Positions 54,991-64,000 of a stretch of DNA of 64,000 nucleotides are shown piece after piece; position 1 is the first letter of the stretch; every line of letters begins with the position of its first letter. The notes beneath the pieces are model-generated. The model saw only the letters and a list, made by a program, of their open reading frames with translations, ran no database searches and was not told the origin of the DNA. The stretch covers positions 157,357 through 221,356 of the IMG/VR virus record IMGVR_UViG_3300027770_001980; one strand, 5' to 3'. A program made the position numbers and the translations under genes.

Positions 54991-55848
54991 ATGAAATCTA
55001 ATGAACTAACTATTGCCATTGTCGATACTGCTTTTTATCCTTTGGCAACCCGCAGTATAGAAACAACTCTGGAGATAACCAACGCGAAACGAGTTTTGGT
55101 CTTGAGCGACCGAGACTTCTTTCCCGGCTCTGATTTTGTTAAAATTGATACCATTAATGATAAAAGAGACTACAGTCGGTTGATGCTTAAAGAATTGGGT
55201 CGACATATTACTACCGATCACTTTATGGTTATCCAATACGATGGATTGCCTATCGATACAAGTCAATGGCAAGACGACTTTATGAAATACGACTATATCG
55301 GTGCTACTTGGCCTTGGGGACCCTATGATCAACGTGTGGGCAATGGTGGCTTTAGTATACGTAGTCGTCGTCTACATGAACTGTGCTTACAGGACGAAAT
55401 GGTGTTTGATCCCCCTGGGTATGGTGATAATAACTATATGGAGGATACTCATATATGTCAACTCTATCGTGTTTGGCTTGAGACACAAGGCATTAGATAT
55501 GCTCCTGCTGATTTGGCCAATCAATTTTCAGCCGAATGTCCCGGCGGTCGGTTTGATACATACGGTTTCCATGGCACCCTGTGTTTACCACACTACTTGT
55601 CAGACGACCATATGAAATTCTATATTGATAATCTACCTAACGACTTCTTCTTAGACGAATCTCAAACTCGTATCGTGTTTGGACTGTTTTTAGCTGAACG
55701 CTGGGAGAATATGGAAATGATGATGGACCGCGGTATGACTTTGGATCCCGACTTCTTATCTCGTGTATTCGATTTGTTTAAGAAGGAATCTGGACTTTGG
55801 CCTGGTATGACACTACACGACCTTGAACAGGTTTTGATCAACTATTAG
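54991..55848 (+). CDS. DUF5672-like (putative glycosyltransferase) protein
   Basis: FMVIQYDG, YDYIGATW, VGNGGFSIRS, EDTHIC and YGFHG. Confidence 0.75.
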   Translation: MKSNELTIAIVDTAFYPLATRSIETTLEITNAKRVLVLSDRDFFPGSDFVKIDTINDKRDYSRLMLKELGRHITTDHFMVIQYDGLPIDTSQWQDDFMKYDYIGATWPWGPYDQRVGNGGFSIRSRRLHELCLQDEMVFDPPGYGDNNYMEDTHICQLYRVWLETQGIRYAPADLANQFSAECPGGRFDTYGFHGTLCLPHYLSDDHMKFYIDNLPNDFFLDESQTRIVFGLFLAERWENMEMMMDRGMTLDPDFLSRVFDLFKKESGLWPGMTLHDLEQVLINY

Positions 55849-55927
55849 ATGAGTAGTTAATAACTAAACCCACATACTTAAATAAAATTGGTAGAATTAT
55901 ATCTACTTTTAAAAAGGAGTCTATTTT

Positions 55928-56158
55928 ATGGACAATGTAATGACAAAGGCTAATGGCCTTTTATCTGGTATAATCGATATTGGCATCAAACTGATTGCCG
56001 CTGGTGTGATCCTGCAAATCCTATTTGGTGCTGCTGTTCCATTCTTGGCTATCGATGTAACCGCAAGCGTGATTAAATTTGTGGCGGCTTTGGGCAGTCA
56101 AGGTTTGGTCGGTCTGACTGCATTGGCAGTTATCTATTGGTCCTTCACTAAGAAGTAA
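55928..56158 (+). CDS. Small membrane protein in its own transcription unit
   Basis: 76 aa with two to three hydrophobic segments; TAAATA at 55879-55884, AAGGAG RBS and a downstream terminator. Confidence 0.7.
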   Translation: MDNVMTKANGLLSGIIDIGIKLIAAGVILQILFGAAVPFLAIDVTASVIKFVAALGSQGLVGLTALAVIYWSFTKK

Positions 56159-56176
56159 ACTCCAATAGTACAAACT

Positions 56177-56205
56177 AAAAAGCCCCAACTTACGGGGCTT
56201 TTTTT
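56177..56205. terminator. Bidirectional intrinsic terminator
   Basis: aaaaagcccc-aacttac-ggggcttttttt between convergent genes. Confidence 0.88.
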
Positions 56206-56290
56206 ATACACACTTTGAGATCCTTACACAACACTTACCTCGCGAAGCGACAGCGCAAAAAACTTTTCAGTAAGTAGTTATATACCTACT

Positions 56291-56848
56291 TTATAATATC
56301 TCAACTAACAATCTACGTGTATCCAAAGCATGTTGCTCACGCTGTTCTAACTTTAACTTATATATGGTTCGCAATAACTCTCGCGCACTATCTACAGTTA
56401 AATCTACCTTGATAGCCTCCCCTCCAGCAGCTGACCACTGCTGACAATTGTCAGACCTGTCATCTACCAGTATATCACCAGCACTACAGTGACGCCACTT
56501 GTCTTCACTATAGGGCCCAAAATGTACTGGAATGTCGGGAAAATATCTTCCTGCCCACTCTATCTTATCATGAAATACCCAGGGCACATCATTGTTGTGC
56601 GGTATGGCCGTTAAGAACAATAACTCCCACCCTAAATCATCTCTGAACCAGCGAGCTACACTTACTAACTCTTCTGCTCCTGGCATTAAGGGCAAATCTC
56701 GAAATATACGACCATTGCTACGTAATCGATCCCAATCCGCTGGCTTATAACGCTGTTTTGGATCTGTTGAATCCGATCCTAATATCATACGTGCATTGGT
56801 ACGCCAATCTGCTACGACTCCATCCATATCTAAGTAAAGTTTATTCAT
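56291..56848 (-). CDS. HAD-family 5'(3')-deoxyribonucleotidase-like protein
   Basis: LYLDMDGVVADW, FLTA, DKIEW and ILVDDRSDN. Confidence 0.85.
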   Translation of the reverse strand: MNKLYLDMDGVVADWRTNARMILGSDSTDPKQRYKPADWDRLRSNGRIFRDLPLMPGAEELVSVARWFRDDLGWELLFLTAIPHNNDVPWVFHDKIEWAGRYFPDIPVHFGPYSEDKWRHCSAGDILVDDRSDNCQQWSAAGGEAIKVDLTVDSARELLRTIYKLKLEQREQHALDTRRLLVEIL

Positions 56849-57281
56849 AACTGTAGTTTACACTGTCCTCGTTTACATTTAACACTTGAGCACCATTGCG
56901 CAAATGAAATACCCTGGCCATCTCGGTGGGTGGACTTAGTGTAACATACTTCTTGATATGAGGTCTACTACTTTCAATATGACGTCTTGCCATTACGATT
57001 AACCGCCTGCCTGCTCCGGGTTGATAACTCCATATGGTGTAGAACACTGCTACTACTGGCTCATACGATGCGAACTCTAATAACTCTTCTCGACTACGTG
57101 GTACTGAATCTCTGTACAGGACACATACTACAGCAGTGGGCTTTCCATATTCATCTTGACTTACTATGATCTCACTCGATTCACTGACTCGAAACTCTAA
57201 TGGGATTTCTGGACGAACTGGATCATCTGCGATTAACGCACATAATGAGTCTTCTGGCTTATTGATAATGTGGAGAGACAT
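56841..57281 (-). CDS. Hypothetical protein
   Basis: 146 aa; DDPVRP...FYTIWSY...GAGR...TLSP, a possible acyltransferase-like pattern (not established). Confidence 0.5.
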   Translation of the reverse strand: MSLHIINKPEDSLCALIADDPVRPEIPLEFRVSESSEIIVSQDEYGKPTAVVCVLYRDSVPRSREELLEFASYEPVVAVFYTIWSYQPGAGRRLIVMARRHIESSRPHIKKYVTLSPPTEMARVFHLRNGAQVLNVNEDSVNYSYE

Positions 57282-57414
57282 GCGACACCTGTTTAATATA
57301 CGTACTTATCTATCAATTGGAAAAACCTTATATATACGACTAAAAAATTGCTGCGTAAAATTTTTACAACCAAAAACTGTTGACCTTACCAGCTTTTTAC
57401 TATACACTTGTTAT

Positions 57415-57624
57415 ATGTACTTAAATTTAACCAACGCAAACCCAGCGCATAGAGGCATGAAACTAAGTGTTAGAAAAGATTTAGTGGTGACCATGCACTC
57501 TAACTTGATTACCAGAGAGGATGATATTTCCGAAATGGTGACATTCATATTCTGCCCTCCTCATGGCAATTGGGAAGTGCAAGAATCATTTGAAGATGTA
57601 CTGGAACAACTGAATCGTGTCTAA
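57415..57624 (+). CDS. Small protein, weakly FlbD-like; start refined to ATG 57415
   Basis: MYLNLTN...WEVQESFEDVLEQL, resembling the FlbD-type V.ES..EV tail. Confidence 0.4.
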   Translation: MYLNLTNANPAHRGMKLSVRKDLVVTMHSNLITREDDISEMVTFIFCPPHGNWEVQESFEDVLEQLNRV

Positions 57625-57886
57625 TTACCTTACCTGCTGGACCTGCGGCAATCAATATCCACAGATTGGATACTGTACTACTTGTGCTTCAATTAGACTC
57701 CAACGCGAACAACTGGCCGCACTACGTGGGGAACAACCTGTCCATCGACGGCCGACACCGGGACAGGCAATTTTTGAACTGATCCTGATATTTGGCTTTT
57801 TTGCTGCAATTTCTTGGTTGTTTAGCACATGGTGGCCTATTGGACTGTTTGCTTTGGGCGCCTTATTGGCCCAACTTGCGAGTTAG
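57617..57886 (+). CDS. Membrane-anchored protein with an N-terminal CxxC...CxxC motif
   Basis: CWTC...CTTC followed by two hydrophobic segments. Confidence 0.5.
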   Translation: MSNYLTCWTCGNQYPQIGYCTTCASIRLQREQLAALRGEQPVHRRPTPGQAIFELILIFGFFAAISWLFSTWWPIGLFALGALLAQLAS

Positions 57887-57975
57887 ATTAGAACGGCCTT
57901 TAGAGTAATACTAAATTTTTGCTGCGTAGTTAAAAGCAGATCTATTATTAATCTCCCCAGGCCGTTCTAATCTAA
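57883..57975. repeat. 17 bp perfect inverted repeat enclosing 59 bp
   Basis: ttagattagaacggcct (57883-57899) / aggccgttctaatctaa (57959-57975). Confidence 0.9.
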
Positions 57976-57993
57976 GTCGACTTTTTACATGCT

Positions 57994-58022
57994 CATACAT
58001 GCTTGCTATGCTTGCATGTATG
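57994..58022. repeat. 9 bp inverted-repeat hairpin
   Basis: catacatgc / gcatgtatg. Confidence 0.75.
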
Positions 58023-58060
58023 TGTGTGACCAGCCGTACCCCACCCCGACCGGCCACACC

Positions 58061-58330
58061 TCACCTGTCATCAGTCTCAACCTCATCCAGGATCTCTATA
58101 GCCAATGCGGTATCACCGTAGACATCGTATCCTTCTGATATCAACTCCTCCACAGCCTCTGACATCAACTGTTCTACCAAGCGTACACGAGCGGCTTGCC
58201 GTGTATCCTTCTTGCGTACCCGGCCGCTGCCTACCCGGTAGACCAGTGCGTAGTGATCACTACAGTAACTCTTGCCTTCTAGTGCAGGGTGTGTACAGCC
58301 AGCACCGTTGCCAATGTATGTACAAGTCAT
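58061..58330 (-). CDS. Small Cys/His zinc-binding hypothetical protein
   Basis: CTY...C...SYCSDHYALVY. Confidence 0.5.
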   Translation of the reverse strand: MTCTYIGNGAGCTHPALEGKSYCSDHYALVYRVGSGRVRKKDTRQAARVRLVEQLMSEAVEELISEGYDVYGDTALAIEILDEVETDDR

Positions 58331-58584
58331 TCGTCGTTCTCCGCTTGTACTGCCTTGACAGTCCGGATTAGGTCTGTACGCTGGGCTTCAGTCATGTCCG
58401 CAATGATCTCCATACCGTGGACCACACCCGTTTCAAAGCCGTCTTTATAGTGTATGTGATTGCTGGCCAACAGCAGGGCCAGCACACACCAGAACTCCCA
58501 CGTGTCGATAGGGTGTCCAATGACTAATAGGACGAGTCCCAGGCTTAGGCTAACGGCAATGCGTTGTAGTGTATCGTGCATCAT
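58327..58584 (-). CDS. Small membrane protein
   Basis: Two N-terminal hydrophobic segments; coupled overlaps with both neighbours. Confidence 0.5.
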   Translation of the reverse strand: MMHDTLQRIAVSLSLGLVLLVIGHPIDTWEFWCVLALLLASNHIHYKDGFETGVVHGMEIIADMTEAQRTDLIRTVKAVQAENDE

Positions 58585-59468
58585 GCTCTCCGCATACAGG
58601 TACCTGCAGCCATCTTAGTCCAGTTAGCGGGAAACTTCTTACGCAGATCAGCCAGCTTCAACACCATACGCAAGCTGAGCTCACGCAGGTTCTTCTGGTT
58701 CTTAACCACGTAGTCAATCAGTTCATCCTCTACACAGGCTTCGAATGCATAGCGTTCCAGCATAGGAGTCTTGCCGGGTTGTGGGTGCTTGATCACCTGC
58801 CGGATACGTAGGATCTTCTCGCGATCGGTATCCATCTGCAGATCGATGTAGTGGCAGCGGCTCTCCAGGGCATCCAAGTGTCCACGCAGTTTCTTACTAC
58901 GGACATGTTCGAACTTGATGTTGGTGATGAAGATAGCGGCACCCTTGAACTCAAAGCGATCTGGAATGCCTTCACTACGCAGGATGCGGCTGTCTGTGTT
59001 CCAGCTGATGAAGCGACGCTCTGAGCTGTCCAGGGCACCTTTCAGGGTGTTCAGTGATTGTTCTTCCATCAAGATGTCGTCACAGTCGTCGAACACCACA
59101 ACGTTGCCTTCGCCTGAGAACTCGTAGAGTTTAGCGTAAAGACCGATTGAGCTCATAGCACCCTTGACCACTTCGAACTTGGGTTTGCGTTCGGCCAGGA
59201 CATTGAACAGATTAGCCTTTTGCAGTACTGCCTCAACGCCAAAGGATTTGCCCACACCAGGAGGGCCCGATACGATCATAGCACGGACATCGCCGGTGCG
59301 GACTGCTTCGGTCATCATGTCCAGGATATCAAAGCGATCTCGCAGGCGGCTATAGATCTCGTCGTCTGTCTCCTTGGCCACTGACTCGTGTGTGCGTTTG
59401 ATGGCCGCCTCGTCGAATTCCAGGATGTTAGTGCCCGCGCTGGGTTTACGTGATGCCTTTGTTGCCAT
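58581..59468 (-). CDS. AAA+-type P-loop ATPase
   Basis: GPPGVGKS (Walker A), VVVFDDCD (Walker B), FITN and ALESRC (Arg finger). Confidence 0.85.
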   Translation of the reverse strand: MATKASRKPSAGTNILEFDEAAIKRTHESVAKETDDEIYSRLRDRFDILDMMTEAVRTGDVRAMIVSGPPGVGKSFGVEAVLQKANLFNVLAERKPKFEVVKGAMSSIGLYAKLYEFSGEGNVVVFDDCDDILMEEQSLNTLKGALDSSERRFISWNTDSRILRSEGIPDRFEFKGAAIFITNIKFEHVRSKKLRGHLDALESRCHYIDLQMDTDREKILRIRQVIKHPQPGKTPMLERYAFEACVEDELIDYVVKNQKNLRELSLRMVLKLADLRKKFPANWTKMAAGTCMRRA

Positions 59469-59494
59469 AGTGTTCCTCGGTTGTTTAAGTGTGT

Positions 59495-59523
59495 ATTATA
59501 ACAGGGGATTGCTCCCCTGTCAA
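59495..59523 (-). promoter_or_regulatory. Early promoter P1: TTGACA-N17-TATAAT; spacer overlapped by the palindrome acagggg/cccctgt
   Basis: Read directly; followed by ACACAC and a GAGG RBS. Confidence 0.9.
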
Positions 59524-59527
59524 GTAT

Positions 59528-59857
59528 TTAATCTGCCCGGCTACCAGCGTAGGCTTGGGTGATGCCCATCTTGCGGAGCACTTCGGCATAGGCCTGGGCA
59601 CCTGCTTCCTTAACGCTCATGCTCTGTGTACCGTGTCCGGATGGGTTCCACAGTTGGAGACCGCCACCGTATGCAGGTTTGAAGCCCACCCGCTTCAATG
59701 CACGGCCCAGTTTGGTGCTGCCTTTTTCGTAGACCGTAACCCAAGCAAAGCCACAATACCAGTCTTCGCCATGCTGGGCGATGTAGTTGTTGGCGGCTTC
59801 TGCGGCGGCTTGGGCGGCAGTGTTATGGATGGATTCGATGTTGTCGATTGCGATCAT
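59528..59857 (-). CDS. Early hypothetical protein
   Basis: 109 aa with YCGFAWV; GGAG RBS after P2. Confidence 0.65.
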   Translation of the reverse strand: MIAIDNIESIHNTAAQAAAEAANNYIAQHGEDWYCGFAWVTVYEKGSTKLGRALKRVGFKPAYGGGLQLWNPSGHGTQSMSVKEAGAQAYAEVLRKMGITQAYAGSRAD

Positions 59858-59887
59858 AGTGTGCTCCAGTGCGTTGTTGATGTGTGT

Positions 59888-59916
59888 ATTATACTGCGGA
59901 TCTGCCGGATCGTCAA
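59888..59916 (-). promoter_or_regulatory. Early promoter P2: TTGACG-N17-TATAAT
   Basis: Read directly; ACACAC leader. Confidence 0.85.
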
Positions 59917-59917
59917 C

Positions 59918-60100
59918 CTATTTCTTCCCAACTTCAGTTGCGACTTGAGGCTTGATCATCTGTACGCAGGTGCCCTTAAATCCCTGCCGTTGTAGATCTT
60001 TGAGGGCCACTTGGCAGGTGGCATCCTCTTGGAACTGCCCCACATAGACCATACTGGGGGAGGTGACGCCCAATCCTACGAGTACAATAGCCCAAAACAT
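59918..60100 (-). CDS. Small early protein with a hydrophobic N-terminus
   Basis: 60 aa ORF. Confidence 0.5.
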   Translation of the reverse strand: MFWAIVLVGLGVTSPSMVYVGQFQEDATCQVALKDLQRQGFKGTCVQMIKPQVATEVGKK

Positions 60101-60102
60101 AG

Positions 60103-60306
60103 TTAGTCCTTCTTAGTGACGGTGGTTTTGAACAGGATGCCAAACAGGAACTGTAGTCCCCAAGCCTGTAGCCAACCGATTTCCTTGACTCCATCTACTG
60201 CGGGCACAAGGCATTGATTCCACAGTTCCATCACAGGCCAAGCCAGTAGGAAGGAGAACAGGACCAGGACTACCAGTAGGCCAATGAATGCGGTGATGTA
60301 TTGCAT
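60103..60306 (-). CDS. Small early membrane protein
   Basis: 67 aa with two hydrophobic segments; AAGGA RBS. Confidence 0.6.
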   Translation of the reverse strand: MQYITAFIGLLVVLVLFSFLLAWPVMELWNQCLVPAVDGVKEIGWLQAWGLQFLFGILFKTTVTKKD

Positions 60307-60315
60307 GATGATTCC

Positions 60316-60534
60316 TTAGAGTGTGAATTGTTTCAGGACGCTTTGGGCTTCGTCCACTTCAGTGACTTCGTCCACAAAGGCCAGGATCATCATCTGGATC
60401 AGTGAGCGGCACTCCGTGCGTTCGGCCTTGGGCAAGGTAGCGATGAATGCTTCCACAGCATCGTATTCCTCCAAAGTCCACATGATGTCGCAAAGGGCCT
60501 TTTGCTTAGGGTTCAGTCCAGCGATAGTGATCAT
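60316..60534 (-). CDS. Small early hypothetical protein
   Basis: 72 aa with a coupled start. Confidence 0.55.
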   Translation of the reverse strand: MITIAGLNPKQKALCDIMWTLEEYDAVEAFIATLPKAERTECRSLIQMMILAFVDEVTEVDEAQSVLKQFTL

Positions 60535-60719
60535 TTTGTAGCCTCGTTAGCATAAGAAGCGCCCAGCGCCATGAGTGCAATGCCTACCAGTGCAAAGGTG
60601 CCCAAGTAGACTCCGTCGTAGGTAGCAAGGTCCAAGCACTGCTCGAAACCGCCCATTGTACCTAACAGCAAGATCAATCCTGTGTACAGACAGAATAGGG
60701 CTTTTTGGTGTAGTGTCAT
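60531..60719 (-). CDS. Small early membrane protein
   Basis: 62 aa with two hydrophobic segments; AAGGA RBS after P3. Confidence 0.55.
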   Translation of the reverse strand: MTLHQKALFCLYTGLILLLGTMGGFEQCLDLATYDGVYLGTFALVGIALMALGASYANEATK

Positions 60720-60746
60720 ATCGTGTTCCTTTGTTGCTATGTGTGT

Positions 60747-60775
60747 ATTATAGCAGGGTTCTTACACCCTGTCAA
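60747..60775 (-). promoter_or_regulatory. Early promoter P3: TTGACA-N17-TATAAT with a cagggt/accctg inverted repeat
   Basis: Read directly. Confidence 0.9.
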
Positions 60776-60777
60776 CC

Positions 60778-61023
60778 TCATAGATTCTCTCCTGTTTCAG
60801 TGTCGATCCGTCCAGTCACAAAGGCAAAGGATGTAGCAGGTGCTGGGTGATTGTAGAAGTGCTCACGGTTGTGAACTGCCGCATATCCATATGCCTCATC
60901 TTCGGCCGCTCCTGGATATGCCTCACCTTCAACCGCAAACTCTCGCTCGCTTAGGACCTTGTAGAAGTCGGGGCGGGCAGTCTCAGGATTGACCCGGTAT
61001 ACTTGAACATTCCAAACAATCAT
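60778..61023 (-). CDS. Early hypothetical protein
   Basis: 81 aa; AAGGAG RBS after P4. Confidence 0.6.
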   Translation of the reverse strand: MIVWNVQVYRVNPETARPDFYKVLSEREFAVEGEAYPGAAEDEAYGYAAVHNREHFYNHPAPATSFAFVTGRIDTETGENL

Positions 61024-61053
61024 TTCGTGCTCCTTATTAGTGTCTATGTGTGT

Positions 61054-61082
61054 ATTATAACAGGGTTTTTAGTCTCTGTCAA
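61054..61082 (-). promoter_or_regulatory. Early promoter P4: TTGACA-N17-TATAAT
   Basis: Read directly. Confidence 0.9.
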
Positions 61083-61461
61083 CCAACTCACGACCCAGGC
61101 TCACGCCTTCAGAATAGTAGCCGTTGCTCTCACCAAACCAACGCACATCCACATAGCCCCGGCGGGTAGCGAACTTGTAGAAGGTCCAAGTCACGCTATC
61201 GTGTTCTTCCTCGTTGAAGTCCACAGGTGTTTCGCCCGACACCTCTTCGGCGATCAACAAAGGCTCACCCACCAAGTCCTGCAGGTCACCGCAGATGTCC
61301 TCGATGCTCACATGCTCGCAACAATCCTGCGAGTGGAAGAACACGAAGCGTTCGGTTGCATTCTCGAACACCATCTCATCGCCATTTTGAGTTACCGAAG
61401 TGAACACCTGGCCCACCATGCTTTCGATCTTTGCTTCTGCGTTGTAATCCATGTATCCCAT
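61069..61461 (-). CDS. Early acidic hypothetical protein
   Basis: HSQDCCEHV...WTFYKF...GESNGYYSE; AAGGAG RBS after P5. Confidence 0.65.
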   Translation of the reverse strand: MGYMDYNAEAKIESMVGQVFTSVTQNGDEMVFENATERFVFFHSQDCCEHVSIEDICGDLQDLVGEPLLIAEEVSGETPVDFNEEEHDSVTWTFYKFATRRGYVDVRWFGESNGYYSEGVSLGRELVDRD

Positions 61462-61496
61462 TTCGTGCTCCTTAGTGTGTTGCTGTCTATGTGTGT

Positions 61497-61525
61497 ATTA
61501 TAGCACCGTTTGGATGATCAGTCAA
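61497..61525 (-). promoter_or_regulatory. Early promoter P5: TTGACT-N17-TATAAT
   Basis: Read directly. Confidence 0.85.
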
Positions 61526-61703
61526 CCGGTTTAAAGGTTCTTCCTTTAAGATCCAGCGTGATAGGCTTGCGGAACTTTACTACACGATCTGACCCTACAG
61601 GGATGTAGGCCAGGGCATTGGCACTGCGAGCACCGGGACGGGTCTTGAAGATGTAGATGTGGTTGGGTGCGTCCCAACGGGTGGTCTCTTCCAGGATGAT
61701 CAT
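61518..61703 (-). CDS. Small early protein
   Basis: 61 aa with a coupled start. Confidence 0.55.
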   Translation of the reverse strand: MIILEETTRWDAPNHIYIFKTRPGARSANALAYIPVGSDRVVKFRKPITLDLKGRTFKPVD

Positions 61704-61912
61704 ATGGCTCGGAACTTGTTCATGAAGGCCGCGTTGATCATGTCCATCTCGTCCTGCATGACATAGAAGTCAGTGGTTGGGTCATAGTAGGCACCTGCCT
61801 TGGGATCATAGTACAGTACACGACCGGAGAAGTTGAACGGACCTTCCAGACCCTTGCGAGGGCCATACCGGTCACGCATTTGATCTACGGTGTCCATTAC
61901 GCGATATCCCAT
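61700..61912 (-). CDS. Small early protein
   Basis: 70 aa with LYYDPKAGAYYDPTTD; AAGGAG RBS after P6. Confidence 0.6.
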   Translation of the reverse strand: MGYRVMDTVDQMRDRYGPRKGLEGPFNFSGRVLYYDPKAGAYYDPTTDFYVMQDEMDMINAAFMNKFRAI

Positions 61913-61938
61913 GTGCTGCTCCTTGTTGCGATGTGTGT

Positions 61939-61967
61939 ATTATAGCACCGTTCTTAAACCTTGTCAA
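61939..61967 (-). promoter_or_regulatory. Early promoter P6: TTGACA-N17-TATAAT
   Basis: Read directly. Confidence 0.9.
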
Positions 61968-62133
61968 CCTCTTGCGAGGCACGCCACGCATCCATATAGG
62001 CCTTACGCTCGGCACGCACCTTGAGGATGCTCAGTTCGAAGCGGCGGTTATAGTAGGCCCATGCACCGTTATCCACCCAACCCTGGCGGCTGCATCGCAC
62101 CTTGTTTACCTTGTGTTTACGCATTTTCATCAT
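61954..62133 (-). CDS. 59-aa basic early protein (not in the ORF track)
   Basis: Hand translation MMKMRKHKVNKVRCSRQGWVDNGAWAYYNRRFELSILKVRAERKAYMDAWRASQEVDKV; directly downstream of P7. Confidence 0.55.
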   Translation of the reverse strand: MMKMRKHKVNKVRCSRQGWVDNGAWAYYNRRFELSILKVRAERKAYMDAWRASQEVDKV

Positions 62134-62157
62134 ATGCTCTTTAGTGTCTATGCGTGT

Positions 62158-62186
62158 ATTATAGCACCGTTTGGATCACTTGTCAA
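62158..62186 (-). promoter_or_regulatory. Early promoter P7: TTGACA-N17-TATAAT
   Basis: Read directly; near-identical to P5. Confidence 0.9.
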
Positions 62187-62406
62187 CCGGCGTTTTCATC
62201 TTCTCCAACAATTCTTGATGCTCCAACTGGCCCAAGGTCATGCTATACACAATGTAGATGAAGAATCCAACGAATCCAGCCATTAGGATCCATGCTCCTT
62301 GTTGGGCTGTGAGTAGGCTTATGATAAAGGTGAGTGTCAGTGACAGTGCGATGGACCCAGAGATGAGTCCCACGGTGTAGAGTATTGCTCGGGTTTTTAA
62401 GTTCAT
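62176..62406 (-). CDS. Small early membrane protein
   Basis: 76 aa with two TM-like segments. Confidence 0.6.
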   Translation of the reverse strand: MNLKTRAILYTVGLISGSIALSLTLTFIISLLTAQQGAWILMAGFVGFFIYIVYSMTLGQLEHQELLEKMKTPVDK

Positions 62407-62780
62407 ACGGTTTCCTTTTTAAAATAACGATAGGGCAAGCCAACCAAGTAGCACAGGAACTCGTCATCACCGTTGCTACCTTCAGCCTCGTGGATCCAAC
62501 GCATGGCCATCTCACGATCTTTAGCACCGCAGGCCAGGATGCTCTGCACTCGCATCTCAAAGGCGTGTGCGGCCTCGTGCTCTTCGAGCTTGCGCTCTTG
62601 CTCGTTCTTGCCAATCAAGTCCTGCAGGTAGTCAAACTCGGCGTTAAAGGTGGCCTCGTCCCAAGCGGAGGTATCGATACCGCGTGGACGAACGCCGTGG
62701 GCATCCTTGTACATGTCCCAGAACTGGCAGGCCATCTGCTCGAGGACTGTCATCTCTTCCCAGCTTTTGAATTCTTCCAT
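62403..62780 (-). CDS. Early hypothetical protein; start refined to ATG 62780
   Basis: WDMYKDAHGVRPR...LGLPY-like tail (LVGLPY); GGAG RBS after P8. Confidence 0.65.
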   Translation of the reverse strand: MEEFKSWEEMTVLEQMACQFWDMYKDAHGVRPRGIDTSAWDEATFNAEFDYLQDLIGKNEQERKLEEHEAAHAFEMRVQSILACGAKDREMAMRWIHEAEGSNGDDEFLCYLVGLPYRYFKKETV

Positions 62781-62813
62781 TGTGTGCTCCGTTGTGTTGC
62801 TGTCTATGTGTGT

Positions 62814-62842
62814 ATTATAGCACCGAAATAAAGACCTGTCAA
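62814..62842 (-). promoter_or_regulatory. Early promoter P8: TTGACA-N17-TATAAT
   Basis: Read directly. Confidence 0.9.
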
Positions 62843-63024
62843 CCGAAATTTTCGGCAACAATGTCTTCCATATCTTCGCCGTGGAAGTCAACATAGATGC
62901 CCTCCACATGCCATTCCAAGAACTTTTGGATTTGAGCATCTGTGGGGGTTACATTGCCGTAGACCTCGGCAGATCGTCGGATAGTGTCTATGACTTTTTT
63001 AGGGATGTCGATGGTAACTTTCAT
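62839..63024 (-). CDS. Small early protein
   Basis: 61 aa with an AAGGAG RBS. Confidence 0.6.
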   Translation of the reverse strand: MKVTIDIPKKVIDTIRRSAEVYGNVTPTDAQIQKFLEWHVEGIYVDFHGEDMEDIVAENFG

Positions 63025-63034
63025 TTGGAACTCC

Positions 63035-63148
63035 TTAGATAGATGCCAATGTCCACATAGCCACCATTACATAGGTGGCGCAGAGTTGAGCGATGCCAAA
63101 GTGGAATGCGGCCCAAACTACGGTGCCCCAACCAATCAAATTAATCAT
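63035..63148 (-). CDS. 37-aa hydrophobic early peptide (not in the ORF track)
   Basis: Hand translation MINLIGWGTVVWAAFHFGIAQLCATYVMVAMWTLASI; GGAG RBS after P9. Confidence 0.5.
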   Translation of the reverse strand: MINLIGWGTVVWAAFHFGIAQLCATYVMVAMWTLASI

Positions 63149-63175
63149 CTCTTGCTCCAGTGTGTGTAAGCGTGT

Positions 63176-63204
63176 ATTATAACGCAAAAAGGGGCTGTTG
63201 TCAA
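63176..63204 (-). promoter_or_regulatory. Early promoter P9: TTGACA-N17-TATAAT; the -35 box sits in the loop of an aaagggg/ccccttt stem
   Basis: Read directly. Confidence 0.9.
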
Positions 63205-63218
63205 CCCCTTTGTTGTTA

Positions 63219-63629
63219 TTACAGTTCCATGCTCGCGTAGCCGTCGTCTTGCATACCTTGCTCTGTAAAGTCTACATCTGTTCCCAGCAACTCGCTCACA
63301 GCATCGCTAAAGCCGTTGTCTGTGTACAGCCGCCAGCTGCCTTCTACTTCAGCACCGTCTTCGCCGTCCACTTCGTAAGTCACTCCAATGTGTGCGTAAA
63401 CGCTCTGTGTGTAAACGTCCCCGTCGTCTTCGTCAAACGTTTCGCTAATGTGTACGCCCGTAATAGTAACCGCTTTCAGTTCGCAGTCCCATATGCTGTC
63501 ACCTGCCAGTTGCACTTCTACGTTGCACTTGTATTCCGTGTGCAGTGTGTCGTCGTCTTCAACACCAGTGTGTACCAGTGTCAGTTTGTCGCTAACTTTA
63601 GCAAATTGTGTTTTCAGTGCTGTTTGCAT
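63219..63629 (-). CDS. Early, strongly acidic hypothetical protein
   Basis: 136 aa, D/E-rich; GGAG RBS after P10. Confidence 0.6.
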   Translation of the reverse strand: MQTALKTQFAKVSDKLTLVHTGVEDDDTLHTEYKCNVEVQLAGDSIWDCELKAVTITGVHISETFDEDDGDVYTQSVYAHIGVTYEVDGEDGAEVEGSWRLYTDNGFSDAVSELLGTDVDFTEQGMQDDGYASMEL

Positions 63630-63658
63630 GTCTTGCTCCGTTTAGTGTTTAAGTGTGT

Positions 63659-63687
63659 ATTATAGCAGTTTAGTCTACTGTTGTCAA
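63659..63687 (-). promoter_or_regulatory. Early promoter P10: TTGACA-N17-TATAAT
   Basis: Read directly. Confidence 0.9.
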
Positions 63688-63837
63688 GTCTTTTTGTGCA
63701 ATGTTAAAAATCGCATTATAAGTTGCAATAAGTTCTTCGTCTGTCATTTTGTAGCAAGCACTGTTGGTATCGCATTCCAACTTAATTTGGTACATCATTG
63801 CCCAACGTGTCATCCCGTTTGCAAGTGTCTTTTTCAT
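63670..63837 (-). CDS. 55-aa early protein (not in the ORF track)
   Basis: Hand translation MKKTLANGMTRWAMMYQIKLECDTNSACYKMTDEELIATYNAIFNIAQKDLTTVD; AAGGA RBS after P11. Confidence 0.55.
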   Translation of the reverse strand: MKKTLANGMTRWAMMYQIKLECDTNSACYKMTDEELIATYNAIFNIAQKDLTTVD

Positions 63838-63862
63838 CGTGTTCCTTTTTGTTTATGTGTGT

Positions 63863-63898
63863 ATTATAACGCAGAAAAGCACACTTGTTAAGTGTGCT
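63863..63898 (-). promoter_or_regulatory. Early promoter P11: TTAACA-N17-TATAAT; the -35 box is centred in a 9 bp inverted repeat
   Basis: agcacactt-gtt-aagtgtgct at 63878-63898. Confidence 0.75.
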
Positions 63899-63906
63899 GT
63901 ATAAAG

Positions 63907-63925
63907 ACCCTACAGTGTGTAGGGT
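63907..63925. terminator. Hairpin at the end of an upstream early gene
   Basis: accctaca-gtg-tgtagggt, followed on the minus strand by cttt. Confidence 0.55.
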
Positions 63926-64000
63926 TATTCGTTAGTGGAACTCGCACCTCCATCAAGGTCGATCTCAATGTTCTCCTCGTCCTCGGCTTCCCACTCAGCA
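63925..64000 (-). CDS. C-terminal end of an acidic early protein (partial)
   Basis: Hand translation ...AEWEAEDEENIEIDLDGGASSTNE-stop. Confidence 0.45.
   Translation of the reverse strand, partial: AEWEAEDEENIEIDLDGGASSTNE

What the first reader, a model, noticed from the sequence alone, without database searches (positions are those of the whole stretch)
59469..63925. Array of 11 promoter-leader cassettes, each driving one to three tiny genes
Seen: 11 minus-strand promoters in about 4.4 kb, all with exact 17-bp spacing. Eight are perfect TTGACA/TATAAT. All are followed by AC(A)C(A/G)C and an A/C-rich unstructured leader ending in a GGAG-like RBS. Longer identities exist: gtgttgctgtctatgtgtgtattatagcaccg at P5 and P8, and P5 is nearly identical to P7 over about 37 bp. 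Established: T4-like and SPO1-like phages carry strong early promoters in host-takeover regions, and promoter-associated repeats in RB49-like phages (PeSL) mediate gene shuffling. Inference: this is a recombination-shuffled cassette array of host-takeover or anti-defence genes, and possibly an RNA polymerase sink.
Basis: partly seen in the sequence, partly recalled or inferred. Interest (0 to 1): 0.6.

Follow-up and report, generated by a model that had tools for sequence, protein, structure and literature searches.

The report
Early-promoter gene cassette array in jumbo phage
The end of this uncultured 221-kb freshwater phage contig carries a dense, truncated row of near-perfect host-type promoters, each driving a few small genes that relatives carry in different orders; it resembles the 'PeSL' cassettes of T4-like phages but also forms a GC-rich codon island in an AT-rich genome.

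Summary
Eleven minus-strand sigma-70 promoters lie in 4.4 kb. Eight are perfect, all have a 17-bp spacer, and all are followed by ACAC(A/G)C, a short A/C-rich leader and a GGAG-type ribosome site. Chance predicts about one.

The array is not an assembly chimera. Independent contigs bridge its junction, and relatives keep it at the same position. The contig end cuts it short; relatives carry 17-32 such promoters over 10-14 kb.

Homologous genes occur in relatives in different orders, and homology blocks end at the promoters. About 40% of promoters carry a stem-loop, against 6% in shuffles, in positions described for PeSL cassettes of T4-like phages. I read it as a PeSL-like immediate-early cassette array.

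Three things differ from published PeSLs. The lineage is nearest PA5oct. There is no AT-rich upstream element. The array is a codon island (GC3 0.60 vs 0.29), conserved in five relatives and absent from the RB49 PeSL region.

Gene functions stay unknown, so 'host takeover', 'anti-defence' and 'RNA polymerase sink' are untested. Enrichment of synteny breaks at promoters is weak. Verdict: new variant of a known kind, moderate interest.

The parts
63863..63891 (-). P1, TTAACA-17-TATAAT (11/12); drives g1
   Evidence: the -35 lies in the loop of a 9-bp hairpin
63907..63925 (-). Terminator-like hairpin (ACCCTACA / TGTAGGGT, then CTTT) right after the stop of the cut ORF g0
   Evidence: sequence; the same ACCCTA...TAGGGTCTTT motif recurs upstream of -35 in relatives
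63878..63898 (-). 9-bp hairpin spanning the -35 of P1, followed by a T-run
   Evidence: (z -2.5); conserved in G001 and G002 in front of the g1 homologue
63670..63837 (-). g1, 55 aa
   Evidence: homologue relocated in G002
63659..63687 (-). P2, perfect consensus; drives g2
63219..63629 (-). g2, 136 aa, acidic
63176..63204 (-). P3, perfect consensus; drives g3a and g3b
63188..63211 (-). AAAGGGG...CCCCTTT hairpin with the -35 of P3 in its loop, then a T-run
   Evidence: (z -3.9)
63035..63148 (-). g3a, 37 aa, hydrophobic
62839..63024 (-). g3b, 61 aa; its TGA stop lies inside the -35 hexamer of P4
   Evidence: homologues in 15 loci
62814..62842 (-). P4, perfect consensus; drives g4a and g4b
62403..62780 (-). 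g4a, 125 aa, phrog_21968
62176..62406 (-). g4b, 76 aa, about two membrane-spanning segments; ATGA overlap with g4a
62158..62186 (-). P5, perfect consensus; drives g5
61954..62133 (-). g5, 59 aa, basic (pI 10.3), no homologue found
61939..61967 (-). P6, perfect consensus; drives g6a and g6b
   Evidence: homology blocks of relatives end here
61700..61912 (-). g6a, 70 aa, phrog_13298 / OCRE-like
   Evidence: 34 loci
61518..61703 (-). g6b, 61 aa, basic; ATGA overlap with g6a
61497..61525 (-). P7, TTGACT (11/12); drives g7
61069..61461 (-). g7, 130 aa, DUF7448 / phrog_2650
61054..61082 (-). P8, perfect consensus; drives g8
60778..61023 (-). g8, 81 aa, no homologue found; holds a 27-nt internal tandem repeat
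60747..60775 (-). P9, perfect consensus with a 6-bp hairpin in the spacer (60754-60771); drives g9a-g9d
59918..60719 (-). Four-gene operon: g9a (60531-60719, 62 aa), g9b (60316-60534, 72 aa), g9c (60103-60306, 67 aa, phrog_2169 membrane protein), g9d (59918-60100, 60 aa)
59888..59916 (-). P10, TTGACG (11/12); drives g10
59528..59857 (-). g10, 109 aa, phrog_22149; family of 896 clusters; confident model with no known fold relative
59495..59523 (-). P11, perfect consensus with an 8-bp GGGG/CCCC hairpin and GCAA loop in the spacer (59501-59520); drives g11-g13
   Evidence: (z -3.6)
58581..59468 (-). g11, 295-aa AAA ATPase, phrog_1250; 46% identical to PA5oct gp359; homologues in 1306 phage records, annotated nrdC.10 in the T4-like Acinetobacter phage Acj9
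58061..58584 (-). g12 (58327-58584, 85 aa, about one membrane segment) and g13 (58061-58330, 89 aa, Cys-rich N-terminus); last genes of the GC-rich block
58061..64000 (.). GC/codon island: about 51% GC and GC3 0.60, against 38% GC and GC3 0.29 in the backbone; runs to the contig end
57879..57979 (.). 21-nt inverted repeat (95% complementary, 59 nt between arms) in the non-coding gap that ends the island; partly conserved in G005

Best explanation
This is the downstream part of a PeSL-like immediate-early cassette array in an uncultured freshwater jumbo myovirus distantly related to Pseudomonas phage PA5oct. Each unit has five parts. First, the stop codon of the previous gene lies in or just before the -35. 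Second, there is a near-consensus extended -10 sigma-70 promoter. Third, about 40% of units have a stem-loop upstream of, around or inside the promoter. Fourth, there is a conserved A/C-rich leader of 24-35 nt from the -10 box to the ATG with a strong ribosome site. Fifth, one to four small genes follow, often translationally coupled by ATGA overlaps. Inferred mechanism: on injection, host RNA polymerase holoenzyme fires from all units in one direction. The stem-loops attenuate read-through from upstream units, and the unstructured leaders give strong translation. Also inferred: the C-ending, CTG-rich codons let these genes be translated on the host's tRNA pool before the phage's own tRNAs are made. 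The roughly 45-55-bp conserved promoter-leader units act as portable homology. Through them cassettes are inserted, lost, moved and re-paired with other promoters by homologous recombination, as shown experimentally for PeSLs in RB49 and phi1. Shown here: the anatomy, its non-randomness, its contiguity with the genome, the conserved position, the variable gene order, blocks ending at promoters, hairpin enrichment, and the codon island. Inferred: early timing, terminator activity, recombination mechanism, and the reason for the codon island.
For: Anatomy and statistics. Not a chimera: a 9.8-kb contig of the source run covers 55001-58974 without mismatch, and an independent lake sample bridges 56481-58235. 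G002, G004 and G005 share the backbone (60-90% aa over G000 192-214 kb) and carry the array at the same place, next to g11-g13, the 146-aa ORF and NT5C. Scale: the exact 22-mer spanning -10 and leader occurs in at least 119 IMG/VR contigs; relatives have 17-32 promoters per array. Shuffling: different gene orders; blastn blocks end at P4, P6 and the g3b stop; the whole P1-g1-P2 unit is relocated in G002; F11-F12 is relocated between G001 and G002, with homology starting right after the -10 box. The same spacer variant fronts different genes, and the same gene has different spacers. The spacer tends to follow the upstream gene and the leader the downstream gene. Hairpins: 42 of 106 promoters have a stem of 6 bp or more, against 6% of shuffles; spacer hairpins show compensatory changes and GNRA loops; these are the position classes described for PeSLs. 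Codon island: GC3 0.60 vs 0.29 in G000 and 0.51-0.55 vs 0.23-0.33 in relatives. The shift is codon-specific: NNC is preferred over NNT and CTG is favoured, but NCG and GGG stay rare. G000 has 41 tRNA genes (32 anticodons), several preceded by other consensus promoters. PA5oct relies on host RNA polymerase and uses TTGAC/TATAATA promoters (PMC7318152).
Against: No transcript data, so early activity, start sites and termination are inferred from sequence only. Six of the 11 window promoters have no convincing stem-loop, and no canonical terminator lies between P3 and g13, so insulation may be weak and transcription cumulative. Enrichment of synteny breaks at promoter junctions is weak (odds ratio about 2, p about 0.04, non-independent). 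Because nearly all intergenic DNA here is promoter, any gene-preserving breakpoint would fall in one. The spacer/leader test rests on 4 and 6 pairs. Promoter-to-promoter joints in metagenome contigs have only 21-24 nt on one side and are not evidence of deletions or circles. A naive match of codons to phage tRNA anticodons does not separate array (0.57) from backbone (0.50), so the division of labour between tRNA pools is unproven. The host is unknown.
Confidence: 0.7

Rival explanations
1. Assembly chimera: the last ~6 kb of 51% GC comes from a different, GC-richer phage and was wrongly joined to a 38% GC genome.
For: There is an abrupt GC and codon shift at about 58,060, and the promoter type is absent from the other 215 kb. 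The block lies at the contig end. Loci carrying the 22-mer are 42-49% GC.
Against: The junction is bridged without mismatch by a separate assembly of the source run, and at about 97% identity by an independent lake sample. G002, G004 and G005 have the same island flanked by the same backbone genes.
Confidence: 0.03
2. Foreign island: the array is a module acquired from GC-richer phages and kept GC-rich by continuing import of cassettes from a shared pool, not by selection on codons.
For: The same promoter-leader occurs in at least 119 contigs of varied size and somewhat higher GC. Cassettes are clearly mobile within arrays. The naive phage-tRNA match does not explain the codon split.
Against: Cassettes shared between G000-type genomes and the commoner mid-GC contigs are only 50-75% identical in protein, so no recent import is visible. 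Arrays of G000, G002 and G005 are 65-85% identical in DNA yet all keep GC3 at or above 0.51 beside backbones at 0.23-0.33, which needs a maintaining force. The 94% match to G001 reflects kinship, not transfer. The codon shift is codon-specific, with NCG and GGG avoided.
Confidence: 0.12
3. Ordinary early region: simply a run of strong host-type early promoters kept similar by selection for promoter strength. Gene-order differences arise from general or illegitimate recombination anywhere between genes, and the promoters play no special part.
For: Breaks also occur at promoterless junctions (24 of 75). An X2 strain variant has a 228-nt insertion between g9c and g9d, inside an operon. Intergenic DNA here is almost entirely promoter, so breakpoints at promoters are partly unavoidable.
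Against: Conservation extends beyond what promoter function needs: the leader to about +18, shared spacer subfamilies among neighbouring promoters, and a 53-nt identity of 85%. Promoter halves re-pair with different genes. The same architecture was shown experimentally to recombine in RB49 and phi1 (PMC2839356).
Confidence: 0.12
4. GC-biased gene conversion: frequent recombination in the array raises GC3 without any selection on translation.
For: The island coincides with the recombination-active array in all six genomes.
Against: The shift is not a general rise in G and C. NCG codons stay at or below 0.08 and GGG at 0.05, while NNC and CTG rise strongly. The PeSL-rich region of RB49 shows no GC3 rise (0.38 vs 0.38).
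Confidence: 0.05

Closest known systems
PeSL (promoter-early stem-loop) cassettes in hyperplastic regions of T4-like phages RB49/phi1, PST/T4 and nt-1/KVP40 (Arbiol et al. 2010, PMC2839356; Comeau et al. 2014, PMC4122927)
   Same: Near-perfect TTGACA-N17-TATAAT promoters, bounded by the upstream gene's stop codon and the downstream ribosome site and ATG. Stem-loops, often GGGG...CCCC or A3G4...C4T3, lie between -35 and -10, over a hexamer, or upstream. Units are packed between small ORFans in a variable region, and relatives differ by insertion, deletion, replacement and displacement of the flanked genes.
   Different: The lineage's nearest cultured relative is PA5oct (Arenbergviridae), not Straboviridae. 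There is no AT-rich element upstream of -35, because the upstream gene runs into the promoter. More than half of the units lack a stem-loop. The conserved A/C-rich leader is part of the repeat. Density reaches 32 units in 14 kb. The array is a GC3/codon island, which the RB49 PeSL region is not. Mini-circles and promoter or terminator activity are untested here.
Host-takeover module of Bacillus phage SPO1
   Same: A cluster of about two dozen small genes of mostly unknown function, served by about a dozen strong host-type early promoters and strong ribosome sites, all read in one direction.
   Different: No sequence relationship was found or sought. A location in a terminal repeat could not be established because the contig ends inside the array. 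Host-shutoff activity is unknown here.
Early region of Pseudomonas jumbo phage PA5oct (Lood et al. 2020, PMC7318152)
   Same: Closest cultured relative: TerL 55% and g11 ATPase 46% identical. It depends on host RNA polymerase, has TTGAC / TATAATA promoters, and its early genes are many small uncharacterised ORFs.
   Different: The 30 kb around the PA5oct g11 homologue shows one consensus promoter, no array and no GC island (27-38% GC beyond the first 1.5 kb). PA5oct has 12 tRNA genes against 41 here.

Membership tests
PeSL cassettes | Near-consensus sigma-70 early promoter, TTGACA-N17-TATAAT | tested here: met
   8 perfect and 3 at 11/12, all with a 17-bp spacer; 13 vs 1.26 expected in the window
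PeSL cassettes | Stem-loop joined to the promoter (between -35 and -10, over a hexamer, or upstream), often polyG...polyC | tested here: met
   5 of 11 in the window and 42 of 106 in six arrays have a perfect stem of 6 bp or more, against 6% of shuffles. Classes: upstream 15, spanning -35 10, spacer 17. GGGG/CCCC stems show compensatory changes. Position classes as in PMC2839356. More than half of the units lack one.
PeSL cassettes | Bounded by the upstream stop codon and the downstream Shine-Dalgarno and start codon | tested here: met
   Stops lie within or a few nt before the -35 (for example the TGA of g3b inside the -35 of P4). GGAG-type site 5-8 nt before each ATG
PeSL cassettes | [quoted passage not shown] | tested here: not met
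   Upstream 25-40 nt is coding sequence with no conserved or AT-rich signal except GG just before -35
PeSL cassettes | Concentrated in hyperplastic regions and associated with indels, replacements and displacements between relatives | tested here: met
   Gene orders differ among six arrays and many loci. Homology blocks end at promoters. Enrichment of breaks at promoter junctions is only about 2-fold.
PeSL cassettes | Recombination between units yields deletions and mini-circles | not testable with these tools
   Only contigs were available. Promoter-to-promoter joints had 21-24 nt on one side, which shared promoter cores explain
PeSL cassettes | Measured promoter and terminator activity | not testable with these tools
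   No expression data; needs reporter assays or start-site mapping
PeSL cassettes | Carried by T4-like myoviruses (Straboviridae) | tested here: not met
   Best cultured matches of TerL and g11 are PA5oct-like phages, family Arenbergviridae. T4-like phages match more weakly.
SPO1-type host-takeover module | Cluster of small genes with many strong early promoters and strong ribosome sites | tested here: met
SPO1-type host-takeover module | Located in the terminal redundancy | tested here: inconclusive
   The contig ends inside the array, and G000 has no end repeats and is rated 62% complete. Array contigs have about 1.4-2 times the depth of backbone contigs in four runs, which could be GC bias.
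SPO1-type host-takeover module | Products shut off host DNA, RNA or protein synthesis | not testable with these tools
   No informative homology or fold

The most novel reading that the evidence does not exclude
The array is a distinct 'immediate-early expression compartment' shared by a large group of freshwater jumbo phages. It would be a standard promoter-leader linker that both maximises expression and lets cassettes be swapped, combined with a codon dialect tuned to the uninfected host's tRNA pool. The AT-rich remainder of the genome would be translated later with help from the phage's own near-complete set of 41 tRNAs. Codon usage would then partition a single phage genome by time of expression far more sharply (30 points of GC3) than in any described phage, and the GC3 island would become a sequence-only marker of immediate-early genes in uncultured phages.
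Probability: 0.35. Interest if true: 0.65.

Novelty: new variant of a known kind. Interest (0 to 1): 0.5.

Why it matters
If the reading holds, PeSL-type mobile regulatory cassettes are not peculiar to T4-like coliphages and vibriophages. They would be a general way for large virulent phages to build and reshuffle their first-expressed genes, and they are abundant in freshwater viromes (at least 119 contigs with the identical 22-mer). The array also marks about 20 small, conserved, highly expressed proteins per genome as candidates for host takeover or counter-defence screens. One of them, g10, has 896 sequence clusters and a confident fold with no known relative. The GC3 island offers a testable link between timing of expression, host versus phage tRNA supply and codon usage. 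It could also serve as a sequence-only marker for immediate-early regions, and possibly for host codon preference, in uncultured phages.

Tried and rejected
1. Chimeric assembly: rejected.
2. Recent horizontal transfer inferred from the 94% match to G001: rejected, because G001 is collinear with G002 in flank and array and so is simply a close relative.
3. Megablast against phage records found nothing. Sensitive blastn gave only a 90-nt hit in the DUF7448 gene.
4. Pfam, PHROGs and PADLOC gave only unknown-function families, and no defence or anti-defence family.
5. PDB sequence searches for g10, g7 and g11 found nothing meaningful.
6. The Atlas search for g10 returned only viral hypothetical clusters. 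The search for g4a did not complete.
7. The g10 AlphaFold model (pLDDT 92) had a best Foldseek E-value of 0.24 against PDB and a best VIA Z of 5.2 on partial helical overlaps, so no fold assignment was made.
8. A RegB-like nuclease that might target the conserved GGAG sites was not found, but the control genomes were silent too, so this is uninformative.
9. Rfam gave no match in 55-64 kb.
10. Host clue from bacterial genomes: the 22-mer occurs only in two small MAG contigs (Opitutia and an actinobacterium), probably mis-binned phage fragments.
11. Phage-tRNA complementarity as an explanation for the codon split: a naive exact-anticodon match does not discriminate (0.57 vs 0.50).
12. Promoter-to-promoter joints in metagenome contigs as evidence for deletions or circles: rejected, because one side is only 21-24 nt.
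13. PA5oct as a model for the array: no array or island at the homologous locus.

Full report
OBSERVATION. Reading the minus strand of 59000-64000, a consensus scan and a pattern search confirm 11 sigma-70-type promoters. Their -35 starts are at 63891, 63687, 63204, 62842, 62186, 61967, 61525, 61082, 60775, 59916 and 59523. Eight match 12 of 12 positions, three match 11 of 12, all have a 17-bp spacer, and eight have the extended -10 TG. The whole window has 13 sites at up to 1 mismatch against 1.26 expected, and no shuffle reached 13. TATAATACACRC occurs 11 times against 0.03 expected, only here and only on this strand. From the -10 box to the ATG there are 24-35 nt, 75-85% A+C with 1-3 T, ending in GGAG (7), AGGA or GAGGA (3) or GAG (1). 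Three corrections apply. Cassettes hold one to four genes. The last promoter drives a 295-aa ATPase and two more genes. The contig end cuts an ORF, so the array is truncated.

CONTEXT AND THE CHIMERA QUESTION. The window is the last 64 kb of a single 221,356-bp virus contig. That contig is rated 62% complete. It encodes a myovirus sheath, tube, large terminase and helicases. The contig is 36-44% GC in 5-kb windows except for its last ~6 kb, from 58,061 to the end, which is about 51% GC. The other consensus promoters of the genome lie on the plus strand and lack the ACAC signature. This raised the possibility of a mis-join. It is not one. A 9.8-kb contig from a separate assembly of the likely source run covers 55001-58974 without mismatch, and a contig from an independent lake sample bridges 56481-58235 at about 97% identity. 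Relatives G002, G004 and G005 share the backbone (60-90% amino-acid identity over G000 192-214 kb). They carry the same kind of array at the same place, next to the homologues of g11-g13, a 146-aa ORF and an NT5C nucleotidase. On the far side of the array, G002 and G005 match G000 at 24.9-26.9 kb, so the contig break probably lies inside the array of a larger genome.

HOW WIDESPREAD. These contigs are 42-49% GC. Dense arrays occur in G001 (20 promoters), G002 (22), G003 (17) and G005 (32 in about 14 kb). G001 is 94% identical to the last 747 bp of the window and continues upstream. It is collinear with G002 in both flank and array, so it is a close relative rather than a case of transfer. It shows what the missing upstream part of the G000 array probably looks like. 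The closest cultured phages are PA5oct-like Pseudomonas jumbo phages of the family Arenbergviridae, with TerL 55% and the g11 ATPase 46% identical. PA5oct depends on host RNA polymerase, uses TTGAC/TATAATA promoters and has its early genes in a long terminal repeat (PMC7318152). It has no comparable array or GC island around its g11 homologue.

GENES. Nineteen complete minus-strand genes lie between 58061 and 63837. Several belong to phage families of unknown function: phrog_21968, phrog_13298, DUF7448/phrog_2650, phrog_2169, phrog_22149 and phrog_1250. Six look membrane-bound (g3a, g4b, g9a, g9c, g9d, g12), most others are small and acidic, and two are strongly basic. Within cassettes, genes overlap by ATGA. 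There is no hit to defence-system models. The g10 family has 896 clusters at 90% identity. It gives a confident model (pLDDT 92, pTM 0.87) with no convincing structural relative: best Foldseek E-value 0.24 and best VIA Z 5.2 on partial overlaps. What the cassette proteins do therefore remains open.

SHUFFLING. tblastn of the window's proteins against the loci, and clustering of all ORFs of six arrays, give 40 shared families in a loose common order with many cassette-level changes.
- g1 sits between g9d and g10 in G002.
- g10 precedes g9b in G004 and precedes g6a in G005.
- F11-F12 lies after F23 in G002 but after F36 in G001.
- About 25 contigs have g6a, then g11, then g9c.
At the DNA level, homology blocks stop at the promoters. 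The g6a blocks end at 61944-61969 (P6). The g4a blocks run from its stop to 62819-62849 (P4). The g3b blocks begin at 62838-62846. The entire P1-g1-P2 unit (63634-63911) is the moved piece in G002. Promoter variants are themselves reassorted. The GGGG-GCAA-CCCC spacer drives g11 in G000 but F11 in G002, and a GGTAAAACC spacer fronts at least six families. Where only the upstream gene is shared, the spacer stays similar (0.50 against a 0.34 baseline, n=4). Where only the downstream gene is shared, the leader stays similar (0.67 against 0.52, n=6). This fits crossovers in the -10/early-leader core, as reported for PeSL mini-circles, but the numbers are small. A cruder test gives only about 2-fold enrichment of synteny breaks at promoter junctions (34/69 against 24/75, p about 0.04, non-independent), and breaks also occur inside operons. 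Promoter-to-promoter joints seen in metagenome contigs have only 21-24 nt on one side. I take these as shared promoter cores, not deletions.

STEM-LOOPS. In the window, P1 has a 9-bp hairpin with the -35 in its loop, plus a separate hairpin after the preceding stop. P3 has AAAGGGG...CCCCTTT around its -35. P9 and P11 have hairpins inside the spacer, and P7 has one upstream. Six promoters have none. Across six arrays, 42 of 106 promoters have a perfect stem of 6 bp or more, against 6% of shuffles. Of these, 15 are upstream, 10 span the -35 and 17 lie in the spacer. The spacer hairpins show compensatory changes (GGGG/CCCC, CGGG/CCCG, GAGG/CCTC) and GNRA loops, which points to an RNA-level role in read-through transcripts. 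These are the position classes described for PeSLs, where such stem-loops were shown to terminate (PMC2839356).

CODON ISLAND. GC3 is 0.60 in the array genes against 0.29 in 113 backbone ORFs. CTG is 0.45 against 0.06, ATC 0.68 against 0.26, and AAC 0.71 against 0.30. NCG codons and GGG stay rare in both. The same split holds in G001, G002, G004 and G005: 0.51-0.55 against 0.23-0.33. It holds even though the arrays have diverged to 65-85% DNA identity, so something maintains it. The classical PeSL-rich region of RB49 shows no such split, with 0.38 in 27 ORFans and 0.38 in core genes. G000 carries 41 tRNA genes with 32 anticodons, several preceded by other consensus promoters. My preferred reading is selection for host-optimal codons in genes that must be translated before the phage tRNAs appear. 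This agrees with work linking phage tRNAs to late genes (PMC12482277). A naive anticodon match does not separate array from backbone (0.57 against 0.50), so this step is inference. The codon-specific pattern argues against GC-biased gene conversion and against a simple foreign origin.

COMPARISON WITH WHAT IS KNOWN. The array works like PeSL cassettes (PMC2839356, PMC4122927). It meets the testable defining features except two: there is no AT-rich element upstream of -35, and the carrier is not a T4-like phage. Mini-circles and promoter or terminator activity cannot be tested with these tools. It also resembles the SPO1 host-takeover module in layout, a comparison from my own knowledge and not checked here. 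I class it as a new variant of a known kind. The codon island, the conserved A/C-rich leader, the density and the new lineage are the new elements.

VERDICT. Confidence in the PeSL-like reading is about 0.7, and interest is 0.5.

Noticed in passing
G000:C1:5096-18512 (outside the window, start of the same contig): There are 41 tRNA genes with 32 distinct anticodons on the plus strand. Several are preceded by a second class of perfect TTGACA-17-TATAAT promoters whose downstream sequence is T/A-rich instead of ACAC.
   Followed up: partly
window 57879-57979: A 21-nt inverted repeat (95% complementary, 59 nt apart) lies in the non-coding gap that separates the GC island from convergent plus-strand ORFs. 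Part of it is conserved in G005. It may be a bidirectional terminator or boundary element.
   Followed up: partly
window 58950-61000 versus 55001-58974: In all four runs laid, contigs of the array have about 1.4-2 times the word depth of contigs of the adjoining backbone, for example 28-34 against 19.6 in X1. This could be sequencing GC bias, shared words from related strains, or a hint of terminal redundancy.
   Followed up: no
window 60101-60105 and 60515-60778: Strain variants in run X2. One contig has 228 extra letters between g9c and g9d, a promoterless junction. Another joins 60515 to 60778 with 27 other letters, so it lacks P9 and g9a.
   Followed up: no
window 59528-59857: g10 belongs to a very large uncharacterised environmental family (896 clusters at 90% identity, all about 108-109 aa). 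It has 35 invariant positions in a 40-sequence alignment and a confident alpha/beta model with no known structural relative.
   Followed up: yes
window 58581-59468: The g11 AAA ATPase has homologues in 1306 phage records, mostly T4-like, annotated nrdC.10 in Acinetobacter phage Acj9. Its PA5oct homologue is annotated 'thioredoxin', which the AAA-domain hits do not support.
   Followed up: partly
window 60878-60931: There is an imperfect 27-nt tandem duplication inside g8.
   Followed up: no
L140 and L141: The promoter-leader 22-mer occurs in two small contigs binned as an Opitutia MAG and an actinobacterial MAG. These are probably mis-binned phage fragments and not a reliable host clue.
   Followed up: no
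window 57166-57886: Two plus-strand ORFs (152 and 89 aa), convergent with the array, have no family hit.
   Followed up: no
G006 (L033), about 9.6-9.9 kb from the left end: In a complete 364-kb relative with direct terminal repeats, the few promoters of this type lie within 10 kb of the genome end. This recalls PA5oct, whose early genes lie in the terminal repeat.
   Followed up: partly
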